In this document: positions 3,506-60,400 of the stretch, piece after piece
Layout of the letters: each line of letters starts with the position of its first letter
Numbering within the stretch: the stretch's first letter is position 1
Assembly (NCBI RefSeq): GCF_006345805.1
Contig: NW_021832849.1
Span: 32,880 to 96,879 of the forward strand
Source of the DNA: Octopus sinensis
Taxonomy: Eukaryota
Direction of reading: 5' to 3'
DNA: 64,000 bases
Notes under the pieces: model-generated
What the model saw: only the letters and a program-made list of their open reading frames with translations
Told to the model about the DNA's origin: nothing
Databases searched by the model: none
Program-made: the position numbers and the translations under genes

Positions 3506-3658
3506 TGTTTCTTTATTACCCACAAGGGGCTAAACATAGAAGGGACAAACAAGGACAGACAAAGGGATTAAGTCAATTACATCGACCCCAGTGCGTAACT
3601 GGGACTTATTTAATCGACCCCGAAAGGATGAAAGGCAAAGTCGACCTCGGTGGAATTA
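3506..3658 (-). mobile_element. SINE-A, 5'-truncated, Tx1-type tail, 18-bp TSD
   Basis: Reverse complement matches the 3' part of the copy at 43712-43946; TSD CAAATATTCATGGTTATC at 3488-3505 and 3659-3676. Confidence 0.9.
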
Positions 3659-3671
3659 CAAATATTCATGG

Positions 3672-3803
3672 TTATCGTCATCATCATCACTGTCTTCGTC
3701 GTCGTCGTCGGCCCTGTCGTTGCCGCCGTCGTCGTCGTCGCTGTCATCATCATCATCGTCGTCGCTGTCATCATCCTCATCCTCATCATCATCATCATCA
3801 TCG
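3672..3803. repeat. (CAT)n/(CGT)n compound microsatellite
   Basis: Direct reading; forms the 5' flank of the Tx1 copy. Confidence 0.95.
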
Positions 3804-5365
3804 TCAAAGCCAGTGGGTTTGCGGCTCGGCACTTGGAGAAGCAAGCCCATGCCGTCCAACAGCGTCTCCGTCGTGGGACGCTGGACCGACGGACCGGTTA
3901 AATTGCTCGCAACCTGGTTCGGTTCGGACCTCCAAATGGAGAAGAATTGGGGCGAAATAACGACTAGGGTGGCCATTCTCATCCAGCAATGGGCCGAGAG
4001 GAAGCTATCCCTAAAAGGTCGGGCGGAGGTGGCGAACTCGTACATCGCATCCATCATCGATTACCGTCTGACCATCGTGCCTGGTCCCGACCCTACCATC
4101 ACCAAACTGGAACGCATACTCTTCCACTTCTTGTGGAAGGGAAGCGTTCCGATGGTTAGGCGATCCATTTGCTGTCAACACCCGCTAAATGGAGGGCTAG
4201 GCACGCTGTAGTTGATGAGGCGCAGATATGCGCTGAGATTGCGACATCTCCGGCGCTTCATAGACGACGGTGAACAGGTGTGGTCGCCGTTTGTGCGGTG
4301 CGCTTTCCCGCAGCTCGTTTCCTTGGCTGAACTGCAGTCGCGGATCAAACAGAGACCGAGGCTAGGCGAATGGCACCGCGAGTGTCGCGTTGCTCTCAAG
4401 CAACTCTGCCGTCCAGGACCAAATTTGTGCGACTTAATTACAACAAAGGCGTTCTATAGAGGATTAGTGGAGGGTAGGTGTGACGACGTCGGGCAGAATC
4501 TGGGCGTCGACGAGGAACACCTGACCCGCCTATTCAGGACAACTTTCGGGCCGGGAACTATGGACAATCACCAAAGGTCCCTGGCCTGGTAGTGCTATCG
4601 AGAAGCATTACCCGGTCGGGATAAGCTCTACAGGCACGGTTCAAGACACACCGGACCGACTTGCTCGAGATGCGGTCAGAGCGACGAAACCGTTCTGCAC
4701 ACACTCGTGCAGTGTCCAACCATTTCGGACCTGTGGGCTTATGCCGAACGGCTGCTGCCATGTGTGGCACGAGTCCGCCTGTCGGCCGAGTCTATCATGG
4801 CAATTGCTCTGCCATCTTCCCTCAACCAGGATAGCAAGGCAGCCTTCATCGTACTGGTGGCCATGGTGAAAGAATATGTGGACTCGATGTGGTGGACTCG
4901 AGCGAAAGTGTTAGAGACAAGCACCTACCTCTCTGGCCAATCGCTCGTCAACTTTTTCAAGTACCACTTGAAAAGGAAGTGAGAATGGAGAGGCAGGTTT
5001 TGTCTCGTGAGTGTTTCAAAAAAAGGTGGGTGAATGTAGCAAAGATGGTGCGTGCGAGTGACGAAACGACTTTAAGCATGATGCTGTAAATCGAAAAAAG
5101 AGAGAAAAAGAGCACTTTGCTCTCATGTGTTTATTCCCTCCCTGCCTGAGATTATTGTGGTCTTTTCCGTAGGCTTTTCTTTCCACGGATAAACCTAATC
5201 TTACTTTTTACATTTGATGGTCCCTTTTCGTCGTTTTTTTCCCTAATCTCTTTTGATCGGAACTTTACTTTCTTATTTTGCCTCATTTTTTCATTTTCGA
5301 AAAGAAAAACTCTACATTTGTATTTGTCCCCTCTGTGTTCAGCCCTGTGTGGCTAATAAAGAAAG
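3804..5365 (+). mobile_element. Tx1/L1-clade non-LTR retrotransposon, 5'-truncated, decayed (copy 1)
   Basis: Translated motifs typical of L1/Tx1 ORF2 C-terminus: RKLSLKGRAEVANS..LFHFLWKG..VRRSICCQHP..GGLG, then zinc-finger region; several stops and frameshifts; 3' UTR ends AATAAAGAAA followed by (TATC)n. Confidence 0.85.
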
Positions 5366-5366
5366 T

Positions 5367-5384
5367 TATCTATCTATCTATATA

Positions 5385-5481
<97 letters not shown>

Positions 5482-5517
5482 ATCTATCTATCTATCTATC
5501 GATCTATCTATCTATCT
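5367..5517. repeat. (ATCT)n/(GTCT)n array between the two Tx1 copies
   Basis: Direct reading. Confidence 0.95.
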
Positions 5518-6946
5518 TTCGCTTCTTGTGGAAAGGATGCGTCCCGATGGTCAGGCGATCCATTTGCTGTCAACACCCGTTAAAAGGAGGGCTGGGCATG
5601 CCGTGGTTGATGATGCGCAGACACGCGCTGAGACTGCGACATCTCAGGCTCTTCGTAGACGACGGTGAACAGGTGTGGTCGCCGTTTGTGAGGCACGCTT
5701 TCCCGCAGCTCGTCTCCATGACCGAACTGCAGTCGTGGATCAAAAAGAGGCCGAGGAAGGGCGAATGGCACCGCGAGTGTCGCGTTACTCTCAAGCAACT
5801 CTGCCGTCCCGGGTCGACCTTGAGTGACTTCAACACAACCAAAACATTCTATAGGGGATTAGTGGAGGGGAGGTACAACGACGAGCTCGGGGCGAACCTG
5901 GACGTCGACGAGGAGTACCTGACCCGCCTGTTCGGGACGACTTTCGGGCCAGGGCCCATGGACAACTTCCAGAGATCCCTGGCCTGGCAGTGCTACCGAG
6001 AAGCGCTACCCGTTCGGGATAAGCTCTACAGACACGGCTCGAGAAACACGGGGCCGACCTGCCCGAGATGCGGTCAGAGCGACGAAACCGTTCTGCACGC
6101 ACTCGTGCAGTGTCCAACAATTTCTGACCTGTGGGCTTATGTCGAACAACTGCTGTCACGTGTGGGATGAGTCGGTTTATCAGCTGATTCTTTCGTCAAT
6201 ATTGTCACGCCTCCTTCCTTCAAACGGGAAGGAAGAGCTATTTTCATCATCCTTGTGGCTATGGCGAAAGAATGTATCTGGTGGACGCGTCTGAAAGGAT
6301 TGGAGACAAACACTTTCCTCTCTGGTCAATCTCTCATCAACTTCTTCAAGTACCACTTGAAAAGGAAAGTGAGAATAGAGAGGCAAGTTTTGTTTAGCGA
6401 ATGTTTTAAAAAAAGATGGGTGAATGTAGCAAGAATGGCACGTATGAATGACGAGGCCACCTTGAGTATAATCCCATGAACCCAGAAATTGAAAACAGAG
6501 GGTTACCCACTTGCAAACAAACGTGGTAACATATAACAATATTGACCAAGGTTACCGTGGTCTTTTTCGTAGGCTTTTCTTCCCACGGATAAACCTTACT
6601 TGCTTTCCCCTTTACACCATATATCATAACACTGTGATACACGATCCCTATTGATCGTTTTTTTTCTTCTTCCCCTTTTTTTTCCCTTTTTTCTTCTTTT
6701 TTCATTTCTCTTTTCTTTTGTTCCTTTTCCTTTTCTTTTTTCTTATTTTTCTTTTTTCTTTTTTCTTTTATTTATTTATTTTTTTTGTTCTTTTCTTCCC
6801 CTTTACGATCTCTCTTGATCGAAAACCTACGCCACCCCCCTTTTTTTTGTTTCTTTTGTTTTTTGTTTTTTTCATGCCCCAAAAGAAAAGCTCTACCCTG
6901 TAACTTGTCCCATCTGTGTGCAGCCCTGTGTGGCCAATAAAGAAAC
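5515..6946 (+). mobile_element. Tx1/L1-clade non-LTR retrotransposon, 5'-truncated (copy 2, less decayed)
   Basis: Begins at FRFLWKG directly after (ATCT)n; roughly 80% aa identity to copy 1 by eye; pyrimidine-rich 3' UTR ending AATAAAGAAA then (TATC)n. Confidence 0.88.
5518..6479 (+). pseudogene. Tx1 ORF2 C-terminal fragment (post-RT region and zf-RVT-like finger)
   Basis: WQCYREALPVRDKLYRHG..CPRCGQSDETVLHALVQC; ORFs 5253..6170 and 6255..6479 share a frame, separated by one TGA at 6168-6170. Confidence 0.85.
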
Positions 6947-8807: not shown

Positions 8808-8924
8808 GTACGCACAAACATCTGGTTTCTGTCTAATTAATATGCATGCATACGTACAAATACATACACAAAACACAGACATACATTTATATAAGTATAT
8901 ATAGGTATATATATATATACATGC

Positions 8925-8965
<41 letters not shown>

Positions 8966-9002
8966 TAAATATATTATGTATAACTATATATATAAGTATA
9001 TA

Positions 9003-9047
<45 letters not shown>

Positions 9048-9050
9048 ATA
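8760..9050. repeat. (TA)n-rich tract at the 3' end of the CR1 element
   Basis: Direct reading. Confidence 0.95.
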
Positions 9051-9127
9051 TTATTTTATCTAGTTTCAGCTCACGAGCTGTGGCCATGCTGGGGCACCGC
9101 CATTTGGCGTTGCTACATGATTTTATT

Positions 9128-11952
9128 TCACGAATGCCTTTTAGCAATTGCCATTTGGTGCATGAGAGAGTTCGATGCAGCTGCCCTCATCTGCACCTCC
9201 TGCCGTGAAGTTGGTTCATCTGGGACACCTGACAGGAAGAGATCCAGTTTTATTTTAAAGACATCTGCATCCACCCCATGCAGGTCTCTCAGGTTCTTCG
9301 GAAGGATATTGAAGAGCTGTGGGCCTCTGAAGCCCAGGCTATCACAGTATCTTGTACTACATCTTGATGGCAAATTTGGAGTCCTTGGCACTATGCAGTG
9401 GCGCCCAGTTCTGGCATTTGTGTAACTCTCGATGCCAAAGTTTGGGACAAGTCCTTCTAGGATCTTCCAGATGTATATTATGGCATATCTTTCTCGCCTA
9501 CGTTCTAAGGAATAGAGTCTCAATCTCTTGAGTCTTTCCCAGTAGCTTATATGCTGCACAGAGGCTATCTTCTTCGTGTAGCTTCGTTGGATCGCCTCAA
9601 GTTCTGTGATTAACCTGACACTGGATGGTGACCATAGCTGAGAGCAATAGTCAAAGTGGCTTAGGACAAGTGTCCTCCAGAGGACCATCATGGTTTCCTG
9701 GTCTCTTGTTCTAAAGGTTCTAAGAATCCATCCGGCCAGCCGCCTACATTTCATTGCCAATTTAGCAACATGCACATGGAAGGTTGCATCGTCACTCATG
9801 TAAATACCCAGGTCTCACACTGATTGTGACTCTGGGATTGCAATCCCTCCTGGTCCAGTGTATTTATTGGGTATTGCATTTAGTTTTGCATGCTGATAGC
9901 ATAAAGCTTGAAACTTTTCAGCATTGAACTGCATGCTATTCTTTTCAGCCCACTTGTATATTTTGTCCAGCTCACATTGCAGGTGCTTAGTGTCTTCAGG
10001 GTTCTGCATTGCCTGTGAAACTTTTGTATCATCTGCATAACTTGTGATCGTGGCTCTCTGCGTGGCTGAGGGCATGTCTGAGAGGGCCATTATGAACAGT
10101 AGTGGTCCTTGCGGAATACCGCTCACTATTTGCGTGTTAATGGAAGTGGCCCCATTGGCTACTACAACCTGGCTTCTATCCTTCAGAAAGTCATGAAGCC
10201 ATTCTCCCAATTTTCCAACTATGCCAAGATCACGCTGTTTGTGACATATTCCATGATCGACTTTATCAAAGGCCTTTGCAAAGTCGAGATATATGACTTC
10301 CACATTTGAGTGGTTGAGCAGTCGTTTCAGCACCCAGTCATAGTGTTGTAGGAGCTGAGTTAGGCAGCTTCTTCCCGGTCGGAAACCATGTTGGGTGTTA
10401 GGCAGCAAGTCATTTTCTTCAAGGAAGGTGATTAGTTTCCTTCTGACTATTCGTTCCATGACCTTGCTGATGTGTGAGGTCAGAGAGGTAGGTCTGCAGT
10501 TCTTGGCCTCCGCTCTGCTACCTCCTTTATGAATAGGGCATATTTTACCTTCCTTCAGTTTTCTTGGATGTTTGCCAGTTGCAAGGAAGCTCTGAAAGAG
10601 GAACTGCAGTGGTCTTGCTAGGACTCTCTTACATGCTTTTAGGAGGATTGCTGGGAATCCATCGGGGCCAGTAGCTGAGTTTGTTTTCATTTCATCAATA
10701 GCCTTTATTACATCGTCTTCCTTTATACTGATGTAATCAATCATCGCTGCCTCTGATTTTATATCTGCAGTGGTAAAGAAGTCAGTTGGATTGCTGACTT
10801 GAAAATGCCCTAGGGGTTGAGTGAAAATACTCTTGAATTGCTCATTTAGTATTTCACTTACCCTCATTGGATTTCCTGTGAGTGTGCCATCCTTTTCAAG
10901 GAGTGGCCCTATCCTACAGTGCACCGTAGCTGTTTCTTTGGCATACCTGTAGAAAGCTCTGGGGTTAGATTTTATGTTGTCTATAGCCCAGGATTCTTTG
11001 TCTGCTCTTTCTTTTTGATGGGAGAGTTGCAGACATTTTTCAATTTCCAACAGTTTTATTTTCAGGTGGGACATTTCACTGCTTCCAATTTGTTTGTTTA
11101 GGTGATTTGAAACTTTTGTACGCCGTCTCATTAGAATTTTCCTCTCTCTGGGGATTTTGTTCTTGTGTACAGTGGCCTTTCTCTCTGGGACACATTTGTA
11201 GCATATGGCTTGCATTACAGACATGAATTGTTGAAGTTTCATGTCGATGTCTGGTGAGGAGAGACATTCAGACCGGTTTTGTTTGAGGATCTCTTTCTCA
11301 ATTTGTTTCCAGTTTGCCTTATGGAAGTTCAAGCTGGAAAGATTCTGAGAGTTTCTTGTAGACTGCATGTCCATGCTTTCCTTTGGCCCGTACATGGTCA
11401 GCTCTACCATGTTGTGATCCGAGAGTAGTATCGGTGTCACTTTCACATTATGGATGAGATCCATATTATTTGTGAAGCAGAGATCCAGTATGTTACCTGC
11501 CCTGGTTGGTTGGAGTATTATTTGCTCCATGTACAGAGTGTTGATGAGGTTCAGGAGGGACCTCGCCTGTCCTCGTTCGCATCGTGTCATTTCTGGGAGA
11601 GAAAGGCCCTCGGGCCATGTGACATTGGGCAGATTGAAGTCTCCCATAAGAAGTACACTTATGCGTTGTTCTAATGTGACTAGAACTTCTTCTCTTTTTA
11701 TAAGGCAGTCTTCAAATTTGCCTACATGGCTTGGAGCATCTGGAGGGCGATATGTGTTTCCGTAAGTGCTATGCATAAGGCTTGCTTGCATGCAACAAGG
11801 TCTCTCAAGAAAGGGATTTTTGTCTTGTTACTGAGTGTTAGCAGTCCTCTGATGTTCAGTAGGAGCATCGAGGTGATGTGTGTGCTGTTGCCGGTGGTGT
11901 CCACCTTGGGTCTATTTGCTGTGGCGGTCTTGTGTATTGTGGATAGTCCCAT
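9128..11952 (-). pseudogene. LINE ORF2: apurinic endonuclease plus reverse transcriptase, with frameshifts and internal deletions
   Basis: APE motifs LLNIRGL, LTETH, YRPP, MGDFN, TRAGNILDL; RT motifs PIHKGG, QHGFRPGRSC, YLDFAKAFDKVDH, GIPQG-PLLF, YADDTK; CR1-like C-terminus LWRTLVLSHFDYCSQLWSP. Confidence 0.9.
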
Positions 11953-11980
11953 CTGCGAGTTTGAGTTTGATGGAGCCAGG

Positions 11981-12805
11981 TTAGCTGCTGTACAATCTTT
12001 TGTGCCATGCACAAAAAGATTCTTGTTTAGCAGCTGCCCTTTCAATAACATGTTGGTGGTTTGTAGCACGCACTACATCTGCGTACCTCCGTTTTGGGGC
12101 AGGTGGTGCGTGGTCCATTCCTTTTCCTTTTAGTATTTGGTTTCTGCCCTGTTTCATGTTTATGTGGCAGGGTCTTTGGTGCGCAAAACGGCAGCCTGCA
12201 CCTTCCTCTTCATGCCAGCAGACACCTTTCAGGTAGAATTTACACATTCATGTGCGTTGTCTCTTTCTATCCTTTTTGGTATGTGGATAGTCAGGTTTGC
12301 TTCTATCCTTGGCTGTTTCATCTTTTGGTTTTGTTTGAGTTTTAGTTTTTCCTTCTTTGGCTTTTTCATCTTTTGTTTTTCTTTTAGTTTTTCCTCCTTT
12401 TACTTCTTTTTTGTCTCTTTCATCTCCATGGTTTTGGCTTTTGGTGCTGGTAGGGGCACTTGCACTTGGGTTTACTTCCCGGGCAGGTTTCTCACTTGAA
12501 TATTCTTTGTTGTCCTGGGTCTCTACCAAATGGGGGTGACATCTTACGTCAGCACCCGTGCCTCCCTCCTTACCATCTTTACTTTGTTCGTTGTCAAAGA
12601 TGGCATCAAGCGTGCTGATGTGGTATCTTATGAGTGCATAGGAGCGTATAAACCCCTGCTTTTTTCGCACTATCTGTGCTAACGTCCTTGTGTATCCACT
12701 GCCCTTCAGCGCAGCTGTAATTATGTTGTTCGGATTATCTCCGTCGGCGCATTGACAGGCTCTCAGGAACAACGCCAATTCCATGCTCCTCCAGGTTCTG
12801 GACAT
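11981..12805 (-). pseudogene. LINE ORF1 (frameshift near 12247): Myb/SANT-like N-terminus, Lys-rich linker, CCCH-type zinc finger
   Basis: TW..MEL..FL...LKGSGYTRTLAQIVRKK and CKFYLKGVC-x8-C-RFAH (C-x7-C-x8-C-x3-H); lies immediately upstream of ORF2. Confidence 0.65.
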
Positions 12806-12859: not shown

Positions 12860-14030
12860 GAGGGTAGAGAAGAAATAAAGAAAGTGTCTATGCATTTAGA
12901 GAGATTGAGAGCTGAGAGAAGATAAGAAGAGAGTAAGAGAGAGTGAGAGGAGAAAGTTCGCGTCTATATATTTAGAAAGATTGAGAGGCTGAGAGAGGAA
13001 AAATGGTGTGACAGAGAGAAGTGGAGAAGTGAAGAGACAGAGAAAGAGGTGTGAGTGAGAGAAGTGAAGAGACAGAGAGAGAATTAAATGAAAGAGAGGA
13101 GATTATGCAAAAGATTGAGCGGCTGAGAGAAGATAAGAAGAAAGTGAGAGAGAGTCTATATATTTAGAAAGAGGCTGAGAGAAGAAAGATGGTGTGATAG
13201 AGAAAGAGATGAAAGAGAGGAAGTGATGCAAAAGATTGAGCGGCTGAGAGAAGATAAGAAGAAAGTGAGAGTCTATAGATTTAGGAAGATTGAGTGGCTG
13301 AGAGAAGAAAGATGGTGTGATAGAGAGAAGTGAAGTGACAGAGAGAGAAAGAAAAGAAAGAGAGGAGGTTATGCAACAAATAAATATATCTCTATCTGCA
13401 GCTACGAAGTTTTCTTCTAAGCTAATTATAAATATCTATCTATTCGCAACTACGAGAGAAGTGAAGGAGGGAAGTGAAGAGACAGAGAGAGCAAGAAATG
13501 AAAGAGAGGAGGTTGTGCAACAAATAAATATATATCTATCTGCAGCTACGAAAGTTCTACGAGAGTTTTCTTCTGAACTAATTACGACTATATTTCTAAT
13601 ATTCGCGTCTATATATTTAGGAAGATTGAGAGGCTGAGTAAAAATAAAGAAAAAAAATACATATAAATAAAGCAACAAATAAATATACACCTATCTAAAG
13701 TTGAATAATTATAAAGAGATATAGTGAGAAAATGACAAAAACGAAGCTGAAACAGAAATTGAAAGATTATTAACAGAATGTAAATTATAAATATATACCT
13801 ATCCGTAGCTACAAACGTTTTCTTTTAAACTAATTGTGACTATACTTCTAATGTTCCCGTCTATATATTTAGGAAGATTGAGGGGATGAGTAAATATATA
13901 TATATATAAATAAATAAATATATGCCTATCTAAAATTGAATAATTTTAAAGAGATGAATTGAGAAATTGACAAAAACGGAGCTGAAACAGAAACTGAAAG
14001 ATTATTAACCGAATGTAAACAGAGAATAGG
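12860..14030. repeat. GA-rich sequence and diverged tandem duplications upstream of ORF1 (candidate LINE 5' UTR)
   Basis: Recurrent blocks TCTATATATTTAG(G)AA(A)GATTGAG and CTATCTGCAGCTACGAA; long block 13520-13790 repeated at 13790-14030. Confidence 0.7.
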
Positions 14031-16750: not shown

Positions 16751-16752
<2 letters not shown>

Positions 16753-16754
<2 letters not shown>

Positions 16755-16975
16755 GCTCAGGAGTGGCTATGTGGTAAGTAGCTTGCTAACCAACCACATT
16801 GTCCCGGGTTCAGTCTCACTGTGTGGCATCTTGGGCAAGTGTCTTCTGCTATAGCCCCGGGCCGACCAATGCCTTGTGAGTGGATTTGGTAGACGGAAAC
16901 TGAAAGAAGCCTGTCGTATATATGTATATATATATATATGTATGTGTGTGTTTGTGTGTCTGTCTGTGTGAATCC
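16753..16975 (+). mobile_element. SINE-B, 5' half (tRNA-like head, CORE-like CTTGGGCAAGTGTCTT, ends in TA/TG microsatellite)
   Basis: Homologous to 30043-30200 and 59942-60110. Confidence 0.85.
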
Positions 16976-19780: not shown

Positions 19781-20355
19781 CACAAGGTACAAGGGCAAAT
19801 ATAAATGTATGTGCGTATGTAGGTTTGTAAATAACCAGACGCAGTCTCTAAGTTTTAAAATTTTAATGGTGGAAATTTAAAACTTAGTAATACGTTTCAT
19901 TTCGCTTGTTATATAAAATTCACTGCTGTTTAATAATAAATATCCTGGCTATAAACAGATGTAATATAGTTGCTGTTATTGTTAGTGTATATATCGATGT
20001 CTGTGAAATGCCTTGTGTTGTGTGTTGGTCTGGACGTTCAACTTCAATAACAAAAGATATTTAGAAATTTCCAGAACCTCTTTCAACTTGTTCGCATCTT
20101 ATTGATCTTTTGTGATTATCTGCATATCTTCCATCTTCCATGTAGCAGCAAAAGTACTTTAGTTCCCGTTAAGAGATGAAAAATATGAAATAATCGATAC
20201 TGCTGTTGTTAGTGTTTTTTTCTCAATTTCAAGTTCCTGCGTAAATTTGCAAAGTGCTTATGTTTGTATGTATGTATGTATGTATGTATGTATGTATGTA
20301 TGTATGTATGTATGTATGTATGTATACACACACATACACACACACACACACATAG

Positions 20356-20802
20356 AGGCGCTGTCATTGTTGTGTGGTTACGAAGCCTGTTTTGCAACAA
20401 CGTGTTTTCTGGTTCATTCCAATTGCGTGGCACCTTGGATAAAGGGACTTCAACTATAGCCCTAAGGCTGACCAATGCATTATGAGTGGATTTTATAGAT
20501 GGAAAACGTGTGGATGCCCGTAGTATATATCTCTCTCTCTCTCTCTCTCTCTCTCGCTCTCTATCTATCTATCTATCTATCTGTGTGTGTATGTTTTTCT
20601 CTGTGACTGTCACTTCCACTGCTTGACCACTGGTATTGTTATGATTACGTAGCCGTAACTTAGCGGGTCGGGCATAGGAGACCGATAGAAAATATACCTA
20701 ACTGAAAAGAAAATATAAATAAATATTGTGTTTAATTTCTTCAACTAAAACTATTGAAGACGGCATCCAGTATGTCCGTAGTCCAATGACTGACACAAGT
20801 AA
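20356..20802 (+). mobile_element. SINE-B, full-length, diverged, with internal TA/CT/ATCT/TG microsatellite
   Basis: 5' half and 3' half (CCGTAACTTAGCGG..GACCGATAGAA..GTCCAATGACTGA) match 30043-30757 and 59942-60400. Confidence 0.75.
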
Positions 20803-20914
20803 TATATACATATATATATATAAAACAAAGGATTAGGATTCAAGTGAACCAGGCACTTGAATGGTAAGGCACCAGGTCGGGTCAAAGTTAAAGTGCATAC
20901 ACTACAAAGGTAAA

Positions 20915-21766
<852 letters not shown>

Positions 21767-22079: not shown

Positions 22080-22741
22080 GCAGAATATGTGGAGATGGAC
22101 AAGAAACAATAAATCATATTATCTCTAGCTGCCCAGTCCTGGCTAAGAAGGAATATATTCACAGACATGACAGAGTTGGAACCTACATACATTGGAAGCT
22201 ATGCCAACATTATGGAATAACAACAGAAAAAAGATGGTATAGGCACACACCAGAAAAGGTCACAGAAAACGAGAAAGCAACCATACTCTGGGATATGCCG
22301 ATACACACAGATAGAGAAATTAAGGCCAACAGACCAGATATAGTTGTCAGAGATCATGAAGAAAAAAAATGCTTTCTAATTGATGTATCAATACCGGCAG
22401 ATGACAACGTGTCTCTAAAAGAAATGGAGAAACTCTCAAAATACAAAGACCTGGAAATAGAGGTAACTAGAATGTGGAACCTGAAAACAGAAACAATTCC
22501 TATCATAGTAGGTGCATTAGGCATGATAAAAAAATATTCAGACAAATACATAACAAAAACACCAGGACTTACAAACACATATAACATACAGAAAATTGCA
22601 CTACTAGGCACTGCACACATCCTACGCAGAACACTTTCCATACAATAACCATCAGAGCATCACAACAAATCACAGCACATACCCAAGGCACACAGAGCTG
22701 CGCTCGGTAGTGAAGTGAAAGCACGCTATAAAATAAAACTA

Positions 22742-24114: not shown

Positions 24115-24270
24115 TTTTTCCCTCGCTCTCTCTCTCTCTCTGTTTTCTCTCCTCATTCCTCTCAGCAGAAGAGCGGAGGCTTGAAACGTCAGACACTCTT
24201 CCATTTTTCTTGAGCGTCAAACTAATAAACCCTGTTTGTTGTTCTTTCGTCTCCGTCTTTTGTCTTTTAT
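24115..24270 (+). mobile_element. Penelope-terminus-like dispersed repeat
   Basis: CAGAAGAGCGGAGGCTTGAAACGTC..GAGCGTCAAACTAATA similar to 30205-30395. Confidence 0.55.
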
Positions 24271-24295
24271 TTCATGTACAGTTTTGAATCGTATC

Positions 24296-24437
<142 letters not shown>

Positions 24438-29313: not shown

Positions 29314-30042
29314 ATCTGATGGCAGTGTGTTCAAGTCAGAAAGTCAACAAAACATTGAGATAAATCATTCAGTAATGGAATCAAATACTAATAAGTCTAT
29401 ATCAGAGTTTAGCGAGCGGCAACGAAGTCATGTTGAGAAAGTAAAAATATTGATCGACAATATATATATTATACTATTTGTTATTTCCATGAGTTCTGGG
29501 CAAAAGAGACGCTCTCTTTTCGAAACATCCTTAGGTCATATGACAAGAAAATGTTACACGCTCTGAAAATTGGTACAGAATAAAGAAATTGCATTTAAAT
29601 CTCTTTAATGCATTAATCATGTCATTTTGCAGAAAAAAAAGATAAATAAATAAACAAATAAATATATAAAACGAAGAGTTTAACGTTGATTTTATTGTAC
29701 TTAGATTTAGTCAATACTTAGATTTATTCTAGGAAGAAAAATAAAACAATGAATTTATAAAAATACCTAAGTTCCTTCGTCTGATGTCAAGAGGGACAAA
29801 ATGATTTGTGAATTTATTGATAGTGATACACTTTATAACTTTGATAATCTCCGAGATTCTTCTTCGAAAAAACAATTTTATTTTTCGAGTTGTGAGCCCA
29901 GCTTGGATTGGGATTCTTACTCTTGTCTTTATTGAGCAGCTCCAGCTCCTTGCGGTAGGCTAGCAATCCTATTGCTGACACACAAAGAATTATAGTCTCG
30001 TATATGGGTTCTGATTCAATAAACATTAGTTAGTTTTCTGAA

Positions 30043-30757
<715 letters not shown>

Positions 30758-59630: not shown

Positions 59631-59941
59631 GTGTATATAGAGGTCCTATGCATTGTGCTTTCCCCCTGGGGTTGGGGAACCTAAACTGCTGTTTAGATGG
59701 CCTTGACCGGCATGACGACTTGGGTACTTTTGGGTGTCTTCAATAAAGTGCCTCCTGTTGCAAGCATGGGGACGAGGTTTCCGGCTTAAAAACTATTTAA
59801 CCTTGCACTCTCTTCTTCATCAGTTACAGAAGTCCCTAAAAAGGTTCTTGAGCCCTTGTTCCTACTCAGTCATAAATAAGCCGATAAAAATATTTTGTTT
59901 GATTCGGGGATAGAAAATGAAATAACAGAACTTCCACCAAA

Positions 59942-60105
59942 GGCGCAGGTATGACTGGGTGGTAAGAATTTTGTTTCCCAACAGTATAGTATCAGGTTCA
60001 ACTCCAGTGCGTGGTATCTTGGATAAATGTTTTCTACTACAATCCTGGGCTGACTAATGCCTTATGAGTGGATTTGGCTGACGGAAACTCAAAGAAGCCC
60101 GTCGT

Positions 60106-60174
<69 letters not shown>

Positions 60175-60400
60175 CGTGTGTGTTCCCCCCCCACCATATT
60201 GCTTGTCAACCGGCGATGGTTTGTTTACGTCCCCGTAACTTTGCAATTCTGCAAAAGATACCAATAGAATAAGTACCTGGTTTGATTAGAAATGAAAAAA
60301 GCATAAGTACTGATGTCGATTTGTTCGACTAAAATCATTCAAGGCGGTGCCCCAGCATGGCCGCAGTCCAATCACTGAAAAAAGTAAACGATAAAAGATA
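59942..60400 (+). mobile_element. SINE-B, full-length, internal (TA)n(TG)n, CR1-type tail
   Basis: Tail GGCGGTGCCCCAGCATGGCC at 60343-60362. Confidence 0.85.

What the first reader, a model, noticed from the sequence alone, without database searches (positions are those of the whole stretch)
9051..9101. Second SINE-LINE pair: SINE-B shares a 20-nt identical block and a hairpin with the CR1 LINE 3' end
Seen: CR1 tail on the minus strand GGCGGTGCCCCAGCATGGCC-A-CAGCTC-GT-GAGCTG-AAAC..GATAAAA. SINE-B at 60343-60362 has the identical 20-mer, and the copy at 30698-30720 matches 21/23. Downstream, the SINE copies point to a CAGTC-NAAT-GACTG hairpin then AAA (30719-30736, 20779-20795, 60364-60380), while the LINE has CAGCTC/GAGCTG: different sequence, same stem position. 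Established: CR1/L2 enzymes recognise a 3' stem-loop. Inference: SINE-B is mobilised by this CR1 family or a relative, with structure conserved over sequence.
Basis: partly seen in the sequence, partly recalled or inferred. Interest (0 to 1): 0.7.

Follow-up and report, generated by a model that had tools for sequence, protein, structure and literature searches.

The report
Octopus SINE borrows a LINE's tail
The last ~50 bases of a dead CR1-like jumping gene (LINE) in this octopus-type window form two small RNA hairpins that also end an abundant short octopus repeat (SINE), the textbook sign that the SINE uses the LINE's enzyme to copy itself; this is a clean new example of a known kind, not a new mechanism.

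Summary
GGCGGTGCCCCAGCATGGCC occurs exactly twice, at 9101..9082(-) just after the LINE ORF2 stop and at 60343-60362(+). The other coordinates, the 21/23 match and the hairpins also check out.

The block is part of a 3' module: hairpin H1 (inside the 20-mer), hairpin H2, an invariant AAAC, then a short tandem repeat. Seven LINE lineages carry it (54-88% protein identity, one from Argonauta). Three relatives at about 50% identity do not. RNAalifold and single-sequence folds give the same two hairpins, and three base pairs show compensatory changes.

The main correction is that "SINE-B" is not a free-standing SINE. In 155 kb of the window plus Octopus vulgaris and O. bimaculoides DNA, 22 of 26 B hits lie downstream of the "SINE-A" head on the same strand, 14 of them within 100 nt. 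B is the promoter-less 3' half of a ~400-nt composite SINE: tRNA-like head, CORE-like body, internal (TA/TG)n, B body, LINE-type tail.

The window's LINE copy is dead, so any driver is an intact relative. The CR1 label fits the domains and the 3' architecture but was not tested by phylogeny.

Verdict: a new member of a known kind, of modest interest.

The parts
9081..9102 (-). Hairpin H1 of the LINE 3' module: U-GGC-G-GUGC [CCCA] GCAU-G-GCC-A, 8 pairs with one G.G mismatch. It contains the 20-mer 9101..9082.
   Evidence: RNAalifold consensus and single-sequence MFE equal to centroid. The core is invariant in 7 LINE lineages; the outer pair is UA, CG, GC or GU in different lineages.
9067..9080 (-). 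Hairpin H2 of the LINE 3' module: CAGCU [CGUG] AGCUG.
   Evidence: Pairs 4 and 5 change on both sides between lineages and in the SINE.
9051..9066 (-). Invariant AAAC followed by the A/T-rich terminal stretch UAGAUAAAAUAA. Relatives carry 5-10-nt tandem repeats at this position.
8888..9051 (.). (TA)n microsatellite abutting the LINE 3' end. It is either an expanded terminal repeat or the target site; this was not resolved.
   Evidence: TRF; sequence.
9128..12012 (-). LINE ORF2 (AP-type endonuclease plus reverse transcriptase plus C-terminal domain). The copy is broken: residues 85-151 of the intact relative P0001 are missing, with a frameshift near 11752-11755, and there is an in-frame stop at 9815-9817.
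   Evidence: ORFs; Pfam RVT_1 5.9e-23 and Exo_endo_phos_2 1.8e-9; tblastn of P0001.
11981..12805 (-). LINE ORF1-like frame with an internal stop at 12248-12250 and a weak CCCH zinc-finger match near its end. It overlaps the start of ORF2.
   Evidence: zf-CCCH_PARP12, E 0.0025, below the Pfam cut-off.
59939..60398 (+). Composite SINE copy of the old subfamily: head plus CORE-like part 59939-60108, internal (TA/TG)n 60109-60183, B half 60184-60398, tail module 60339-60383.
   Evidence: nhmmer; alignment; covariance-model hit of 57 bits.
20355..20804 (+). Composite SINE copy, old and decayed: head part 20355-20528, microsatellite, B half 20613-20804, tail module 20758-20798.
   Evidence: (13.9 bits, E 0.006).
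30037..30752 (+). Composite SINE copy interrupted by an unrelated repeat: head part 30037-30194, foreign repeat about 30230-30450, microsatellite, B half 30560-30752, tail module 30694-30738.
   Evidence: (47 bits).

Best explanation
Window 9051-9102(-) is the 3'-terminal recognition module of an octopod LINE with AP-endonuclease and reverse-transcriptase domains and CR1-like architecture. In the RNA it forms two abutting hairpins. H1 is nearly invariant in sequence. H2 keeps its shape while its sequence varies. They are followed by an invariant AAAC and a short tandem repeat. By analogy with stringent-type LINEs, the ORF2 protein binds this module on its own transcript and starts target-primed reverse transcription at the terminal repeat. 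The same module ends an abundant Octopus SINE. That SINE is a ~400-nt composite: a tRNA-like Pol III head, a CORE-like body, an internal (TA/TG)n tract, the 'B' body, then the LINE-type tail. Pol III would start at the head and read through, since the consensus has no TTTT terminator. The tail would then let the SINE RNA borrow the ORF2 protein of intact members of this LINE family in trans. Shown here: the shared sequence, the fold, the compensatory changes, the composite architecture, the 3'-anchoring of all copies, and the dead state of the window's LINE copy. Inferred: protein binding, trans-mobilisation, Pol III read-through, and transfer of the tail from LINE to SINE.
For: The 20-mer is exact in the LINE and in one SINE copy, and about 60 nt of tail align at about 75%. 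Seven LINE lineages end with GG[CT]GGTGC[CAT]CCAGCATGGCC-N-CAGC...GCTG-AAAC plus tandem repeats just after the ORF2 stop: the window, L001 (88% protein identity), L002 (61%), L003 (58%), L004 Argonauta (54%), L125 (65%) and L131 (67%). RNAalifold predicts the two hairpins, and each of 7 sequences folds into them alone with MFE equal to centroid and z from -1.3 to -3.5. With the given structure 95.7% of cells pair, against 22-43% when partners are slid. Three pairs change on both sides: the outer H1 pair is UA/CG/GC/GU, H2 pair 4 is CG in LINEs and UA in the SINE, and H2 pair 5 is UA or CG. Differences between SINE subfamilies fall in loops (CCCA against UCCA, CAAU against AAAU). LINE lineage L131 shares the GCTCC variant and a TAAAAGAR terminal repeat with the young SINE. 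A covariance model of the module finds 2 LINE tails, 24 SINE tails and nothing else in 163 kb. SINE copies vary at the 5' end but nearly all reach the 3' end. For the composite: 22 of 26 B hits have the head upstream on the same strand and 14 lie within 100 nt. The junction is conserved, divergence of the two halves correlates at r=0.76, and A and B boxes occur only in the head. Precedents are bivalve SINEs with the CR1-14_CGi tail (PMC4824008), passerine CR1-tailed SINEs (PMC5729268) and L2 ORF2 binding its stem-loop (PMC4176376). CR1 and SINE families are both recently active in O. vulgaris (PMC13282606).
Against: No experiment supports mobilisation. The covariation rests on about 3-4 independent events among 9 sequences, and 9 of 13 pairs never vary, so H1 may be read as sequence rather than as a helix. 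No LINE seen here has the SINE's exact H2 (CAGUC/GACUG), so the true driver lineage was not identified. The window's LINE is dead, and only one LINE copy lies in the 155 kb. The CR1 clade assignment is untested. The tRNA origin of the head is not called by ARAGORN or Rfam. The three Octopus loci were found through SINE-derived 'proteins', so they are enriched for the SINE.
Confidence: 0.8

Rival explanations
1. One reading: SINE-B is a self-standing SINE with its own promoter, and it merely happens to lie near SINE-A copies.
For: Four B hits have no head within 1.5 kb (L128 1-120, which is cut by the locus edge, plus L128 2991, L128 5535 and L130 4254), and head-only copies exist (window 16751, 31115; L130 2669).
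Against: All 3 window copies and 22 of 26 B hits overall have the head upstream on the same strand. B has no A/B boxes. Head-less B copies are what 5' truncation of a composite produces. The junction sequence is conserved between copies.
Confidence: 0.07
2. B is a separate element that inserts preferentially into the (TA/TG)n tail of SINE-A, so the pairing comes from target choice and not from a composite RNA.
For: The LINE and several SINE copies abut (TA)n or (TG)n tracts. LINEs with microsatellite tails can prime on matching repeats (general knowledge).
Against: The spacer is 41-58 nt in most young copies and is followed by the same GTGTTTGTGTGTCTGTGTTTGTCCCCC junction. Divergence of the two halves correlates. 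B would still need a promoter, and none was found.
Confidence: 0.08
3. The shared block reflects capture of a SINE tail by the LINE, or common descent, with no present functional dependence.
For: The direction of transfer cannot be read from two sequences alone.
Against: The module is found in LINE lineages down to 54% protein identity, including Argonauta. The Argonauta SINE with the same head and CORE-like body has a different 3' body and tail, so the module looks older in the LINEs. All 24 SINE copies end with it.
Confidence: 0.04
4. The similarity is due to chance or low complexity.
For: None.
Against: An exact 20-mer of mixed composition, about 60 nt aligned, recurring in 7 LINE lineages and 24 SINE copies.
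Confidence: 0.01

Closest known systems
Bivalve BivaV-SINE2 and BivaCORE-SINE1 paired with LINE CR1-14_CGi (Nishihara et al. 2016, PMC4824008)
   Same: Mollusc SINEs, one with a CORE domain, whose 3' tails match a CR1 LINE tail, with conserved stem-loops and compensatory changes between SINE and LINE.
   Different: The host class and the tail sequence differ. Here the module is two abutting hairpins, the first nearly invariant, and the SINE is a ~400-nt composite with an internal microsatellite. Their sequences are in figures, so I could not compare them directly.
Amniote CR1 and CR1-tailed SINEs such as TguSINE1 and PittSINE (PMC5729268, PMC8665684)
   Same: EN plus RT in ORF2, and a 3' hairpin taken to be the RT binding site followed by a short terminal repeat of about 8 nt in place of poly(A). 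The SINEs carry the same tail behind a tRNA head.
   Different: The amniote repeat is ATTCTRTG. Here the repeats are TAAAAGAG, TAAAAGAA, ATACAAG, AATTA and AAAACATT, preceded by an invariant AAAC, and there are two hairpins.
L2-clade pairs: eel UnaL2/UnaSINE1 and zebrafish ZfL2-1/ZfL2-2 (PMC4176376)
   Same: Stringent recognition of a 3' stem-loop by ORF2p, and a SINE sharing that tail. In that system the stem is read generally and the loop specifically by a region between EN and RT.
   Different: That system has been tested experimentally; this one has not. The clade may also differ.
Octopus CORE-SINEs OR1/OR2 (Ohshima and Okada 1994, as cited in PMC4758252 and PMC4824008) and the 'tRNA-Core' and 'tRNA-Deu' SINEs of Octopus repeat annotations (PMC8967140)
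   Same: A tRNA-like head plus CORE-like body, very abundant in Octopus. The element here is probably one of these.
   Different: I could not obtain the published consensus sequences, so identity is untested. None of the papers I could read names a partner LINE for them.

Membership tests
CR1-clade LINE | AP-type endonuclease and reverse transcriptase in one ORF2, with no RNase H | tested here: met
   Window ORF2 pieces hit Exo_endo_phos_2 and RVT_1. The intact relative P0001 (1033 aa) hits Exo_endo_phos_2 and RVT_1, plus Exo_endo_phos below the Pfam cut-off (21.7 against 24.5 bits); no other domain was found.
CR1-clade LINE | 3' end with a hairpin followed by a short tandem repeat (about 8 nt) and no poly(A) (PMC8665684, PMC5729268) | tested here: met
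   Hairpins. Terminal repeats of 5-8 nt are seen in L003, L004, L125, L131 and the SINE. The window copy itself ends in TAGATAAAATAA followed by (TA)n.
CR1-clade LINE | RT phylogeny places it with reference CR1 elements rather than L2, Rex1, Jockey or RTE | not testable with these tools
From memory only, the C-terminal pattern LW..LV...FDYC.QLWSP...LE..QR...Y.ERL..L.L.SLE.RR resembles the CR1/L2 C-terminal domain; that is a lead, not a test.
LINE-dependent (stringent-type) SINE | 3' end homologous to the 3' end of a LINE in the same genome | tested here: met
LINE-dependent (stringent-type) SINE | Internal Pol III promoter (A and B boxes) in a small-RNA-derived head | tested here: inconclusive
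   An A box at position 11 (1 mismatch) and a B box at position 54 (2 mismatches), 43 nt apart, occur only in the head. ARAGORN and the Rfam tRNA model do not call it.
LINE-dependent (stringent-type) SINE | Copies anchored at the 3' end with variable 5' truncation, interspersed and numerous | tested here: met
   24 tails in 155 kb. B-profile starts range from 2 to 122, while ends are 192-211 except where a copy is cut or interrupted. The three Octopus loci were picked through the SINE, so the density is biased upward.
LINE-dependent (stringent-type) SINE | Mobilised in trans by the partner LINE's protein | not testable with these tools
   Needs a retrotransposition assay.
CORE-SINE superfamily | Central CORE domain | not tested
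   CACCTTGGGCAAGTGTCTTCTACTATAGCC resembles the MIR/CORE motif as I recall it. The literature says Octopus OR1/OR2 and the 'tRNA-Core' SINEs are CORE-SINEs (PMC4758252, PMC4824008, PMC8967140). No reference sequence was at hand.

The most novel reading that the evidence does not exclude
The partner LINE of the dominant Octopus SINE (SINEs are about 4-12% of Octopus genomes in the literature) has not been named in any paper I could read. If this LINE family is the partner, the SINE expansion is tied to a CR1-like lineage whose 3' module is bipartite. One hairpin would be read by sequence, being invariant over LINE lineages that differ by up to 46% in protein. The other would be read by shape. 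The composite SINE would also have been made by adding a new LINE tail behind an older CORE-type SINE while keeping the old microsatellite tail inside. That would make the SINE a genome-wide seeder of (TA/TG)n microsatellites.
Probability: 0.35. Interest if true: 0.45.

Novelty: new member of a known kind. Interest (0 to 1): 0.33.

Why it matters
SINEs are among the largest components of Octopus genomes, and they have been linked, with some dispute, to genome reshuffling and neural expression. A recent O. vulgaris annotation leaves 893 of 900 recently active SINE families unclassified (PMC13282606). Knowing that the common SINE ends in the tail of a specific CR1-like LINE family does three things. 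It says which LINE activity should be measured to explain the SINE bursts. It gives a compact, testable RNA element of about 45 nt for studying recognition by stringent-type LINEs outside vertebrates. It also corrects repeat annotation, because the 'A' and 'B' pieces are one element.

Tried and rejected
1. A scan of metagenome contigs for the 17-mer core returned 120 loci, but none had the downstream hairpin/AAAC context of the module; two matched my crude flag by chance, and all look like chance matches.
2. ARAGORN and Rfam on the window, and on young SINE copies, found no tRNA and no family. The only Rfam hits were microsatellite artefacts.
3. I looked for names or organisms for the LINE relatives and found none.
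4. I looked for a host gene in the window, to fetch an orthologous empty site. The long ORFs are low-complexity sequence or transposon fragments.
5. Full-text searches for the motif sequences, and for an octopus SINE-LINE partnership, found nothing specific. The SINEBase supplements and Ohshima et al. 1996 are not held.
6. I tested whether the module reaches distant relatives. Oratosquilla (L126), Clytia (L127) and a Tara Oceans contig (L132), all at about 50% C-terminal identity, lack it.
7. I tested whether the B body matches any other part of the LINE. Only the last ~60 nt match.
8. I searched for the SINE-A internal hairpin GACGG...CCGTC in any LINE of the window. It occurs only in SINE copies.
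9. A hack that worked: a query made of concatenated translations of SINE-B frames retrieved annotated Octopus 'proteins' that are SINE translations. These gave 91 kb of Octopus DNA.

Full report
**Observation.** On the minus strand, 9101..9051 reads GGCGGTGCCCCAGCATGGCC-A-CAGCTCGTGAGCTG-AAAC-TAGATAAAATAA.
- The 20-mer occurs exactly twice in the window, here and at 60343-60362(+). The only other hit with up to 4 mismatches is 30698-30717, with 2 mismatches.
- The 21/23 match and the three SINE hairpin coordinates are correct.
- By simple arithmetic, chance recurrence of a given 20-mer in this window is about 1e-7.
- Two points need correcting. The LINE stem is 5 bp with a CGUG loop, not 6 bp with a 2-nt loop. 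The 20-mer is itself a hairpin.

**The LINE.** The block lies 27 nt after the stop codon of a LINE on the minus strand.
- ORF2 pieces 9128-9799 and 9815-11791 hit RVT_1 (5.9e-23) and Exo_endo_phos_2 (1.8e-9).
- An ORF1-like frame runs 12805-11981, with a weak CCCH finger match.
- Compared with the intact 1033-aa relative P0001 (88% identity, a Logan contig), the window copy lacks residues 85-151 and shifts frame near 11752-11755. It has an in-frame stop at 9815-9817, and ORF1 has a stop at 12248-12250. This copy is dead.
- It is the only copy of the family in the window.

**The 3' end in other LINE copies.**
- I fetched the DNA of relatives. L001 (88%), L002 (61%), L003 (58%), L004 from Argonauta hians (54%), L125 (65% over the C-terminus) and L131 (67%) all end, just after ORF2, with GG[CT]GGTGC[C/A/T]CCAGCATGGCC-N-CAGC..loop..GCTG-AAAC.
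- After AAAC each has a short tandem repeat: (AATTA)n, (ATACAAG)2, (AAAACATT)2 or (TAAAAGAA)2.
- Relatives at about 50% C-terminal identity lack the block. These are a mantis shrimp (L126), Clytia (L127) and a Tara Oceans contig (L132). They do end in 10-nt tandem repeats, and L127 and L132 have a GAAAC just before them.
- The module therefore defines a cephalopod-level LINE lineage, and the test does not refute the finding.

**Structure.** This was the second refutation test.
- RNAalifold on six LINE tails plus the three window SINE tails predicts two abutting hairpins. H1 lies inside the 20-mer, has a CCCA loop and one G.G mismatch. H2 has 5 bp.
- Five LINE tails and two SINE consensus tails each fold into this same shape alone. 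MFE equals centroid, and z-scores run from -1.3 to -3.5.
- On seven LINE tails plus two SINE subfamily consensus sequences, 95.7% of cells pair, against 22-43% when the 3' partners are slid by 1-3 columns.
- Three pairs change on both sides. The outer H1 pair is UA, CG, GC or GU. H2 pair 4 is C-G in all LINEs and U-A in the SINE. H2 pair 5 is U-A in the window and L001, and C-G in L004, L125, L131 and the SINE.
- This amounts to roughly three or four independent events, so it is supportive but thin. Six of the eight H1 pairs never vary, and one more varies only on one side (C-G to U-G), so H1 may be read as sequence.
- The differences between old and young SINE subfamilies fall in the loops: CCCA against UCCA, and CAAU against AAAU.

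**What "SINE-B" is.**
- The three window copies have no tRNA-like signal.
Only a microsatellite separates them, or a microsatellite plus an inserted foreign repeat in copy 30.
- To get more copies I searched with concatenated translations of SINE-B frames. This retrieved annotated Octopus vulgaris and O. bimaculoides "proteins" that are SINE translations, and through them 91 kb of Octopus DNA.
- Profile searches over 155 kb gave 26 B hits. Of these, 22 have the A part upstream on the same strand within 1.5 kb, and 14 have it within 100 nt. Of 17 B hits with a complete 5' end, 11 have A within 100 nt.
- Ten aligned copies give a 402-nt consensus: head GGCGCAGGAGTGGCTGTGTGGTAAG...GGTTCAGTCCCAC, a CORE-like body, GACGGAAACTGAAAGAAGCCCGTC, GTATATATGT(TA/TG)n, the conserved junction GTGTTTGTGTGTCTGTGTTTGTCCCCC, the B body, then AAAGGCGGTGCTCCAGCATGGCCGCAGTCAAATGACTGAAACAAG(TAAAAGAG)n.
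- An A box (position 11, 1 mismatch) and a B box (position 54, 2 mismatches) occur only in the head. The consensus has no TTTT. Divergence of the two halves correlates at r=0.76.
- Copies are truncated at the 5' end to varying degrees but nearly all reach the 3' end. The terminal repeat has 1-3 units.
- B is therefore the promoter-less 3' half of a composite SINE. Head-less B copies are best read as 5' truncations.

**Link between SINE and LINE.**
- Only the last ~60 nt of the SINE match the LINE, and no other part does.
- The older SINE subfamily (window 60184, L130 9372 and others) has GGTGCCCCAGCATGGCC, as most of the LINEs do. The young O. vulgaris subfamily has GCTCC and (TAAAAGAG)n. LINE lineage L131 has both features, GCTCC and (TAAAAGAA)2.
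- A covariance model of the module finds 2 LINE tails and 24 SINE tails in 163 kb, and nothing else.
- The Argonauta SINE shares the head and CORE-like body but has a different 3' half, while the Argonauta LINE does have the module. This suggests the module is older in the LINEs and was acquired by the Octopus SINE.

**Mechanism (inferred).** The ORF2 protein of intact family members binds the double hairpin and primes on the terminal repeat. The SINE RNA is made by Pol III from the head and ends in the same module, so it is copied in trans. Stem-loop recognition is shown experimentally for L2-clade LINEs (PMC4176376). For CR1 it is a standing inference (PMC8665684, PMC5729268).

**Comparison and novelty.**
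[quoted passage not shown] Passerine CR1-tailed SINEs are another (PMC5729268).
- CR1 membership fits the domains and the hairpin-plus-repeat 3' end, but RT phylogeny could not be run.
- Octopus SINEs are annotated as tRNA-Core and tRNA-Deu (PMC8967140). CR1 families and SINE families, the latter mostly unclassified, are both recently active in O. vulgaris (PMC13282606).
- I found no paper naming the partner LINE. Curated repeat libraries may already hold this pair.
- Verdict: a real and tidy SINE-LINE tail pair, a new member of a known kind, with the unit "SINE-B" redefined.

Noticed in passing
window 59939-60398, 20355-20804, 30037-30752; L128, L129, L130 (many copies): The composite SINE carries an internal (TA)n(TG)n tract whose length differs between copies, from about 15 to about 75 nt. 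Each insertion therefore plants a microsatellite, which may account for many of the TA/TG repeats in this window.
   Followed up: partly
window 16751-16921(+), 31115-30946(-); L130 2669-2499(-): Head-plus-CORE ('SINE-A') copies that end in the microsatellite with no B half. They could be a separate shorter SINE family or 3'-deleted composites; L130 2669 seems to keep about 25 nt of the junction.
   Followed up: partly
L004 5667-5808(-), 6675-6794(-), 8028-8147(+): The Argonauta hians SINE shares the CORE-like body and the GACGGAAACTGAAAGAAGCCCGTC hairpin with the Octopus SINE. It continues into a different 3' body that ends in CATTTTACATTT-type repeats, an apparent tail or module swap between octopod lineages.
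   Followed up: partly
L130 19797-20293: A 116-nt tandem repeat, 4.3 copies at 98% identity, whose unit contains part of the SINE (B box to CORE region, reverse orientation). This is a young satellite built from a SINE fragment in O. vulgaris.
   Followed up: partly
window 30230-30450 and 24159-24366: An unidentified repeat, about 68% identical between the two sites, sits between the head and the B half of SINE copy 30. The second copy is followed by a long (CTAT)n.
   Followed up: no
window 3591-4592 and 5253-6170 (+): Two related fragments of the 3' part of another LINE family; the second hits zf-RVT at 2.6e-8.
   Followed up: partly
window 21317-21670 and 22295-22648 (+): Two identical 117-aa ORFs 978 nt apart (MPIHTDREIKANRPDIVV...), with no Pfam hit. 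This is a very recent duplication or the terminal repeats of a young mobile element.
   Followed up: no
P0243-P0249: Several annotated Octopus vulgaris and O. bimaculoides proteins, including entries with SSF, TPR, C2H2 and VWD domains, contain translated SINE-B sequence. These are either exonised SINEs or gene-model artefacts.
   Followed up: no
L126, L127, L132 3' ends: Distant relatives of the LINE in a mantis shrimp, Clytia and a marine metagenome lack the 20-mer, but each ends in two copies of a 10-11-nt unit. In L127 and L132 a GAAAC precedes the repeats, so the 3' architecture seems older than the sequence.
   Followed up: partly
window 13088-13326: Purine-rich 121-nt tandem repeats (2 copies, 88% identity) lie just upstream of the LINE ORF1, with further repeats reaching about 13900. 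They may be the LINE's 5' UTR; the element's 5' end was not defined.
   Followed up: no
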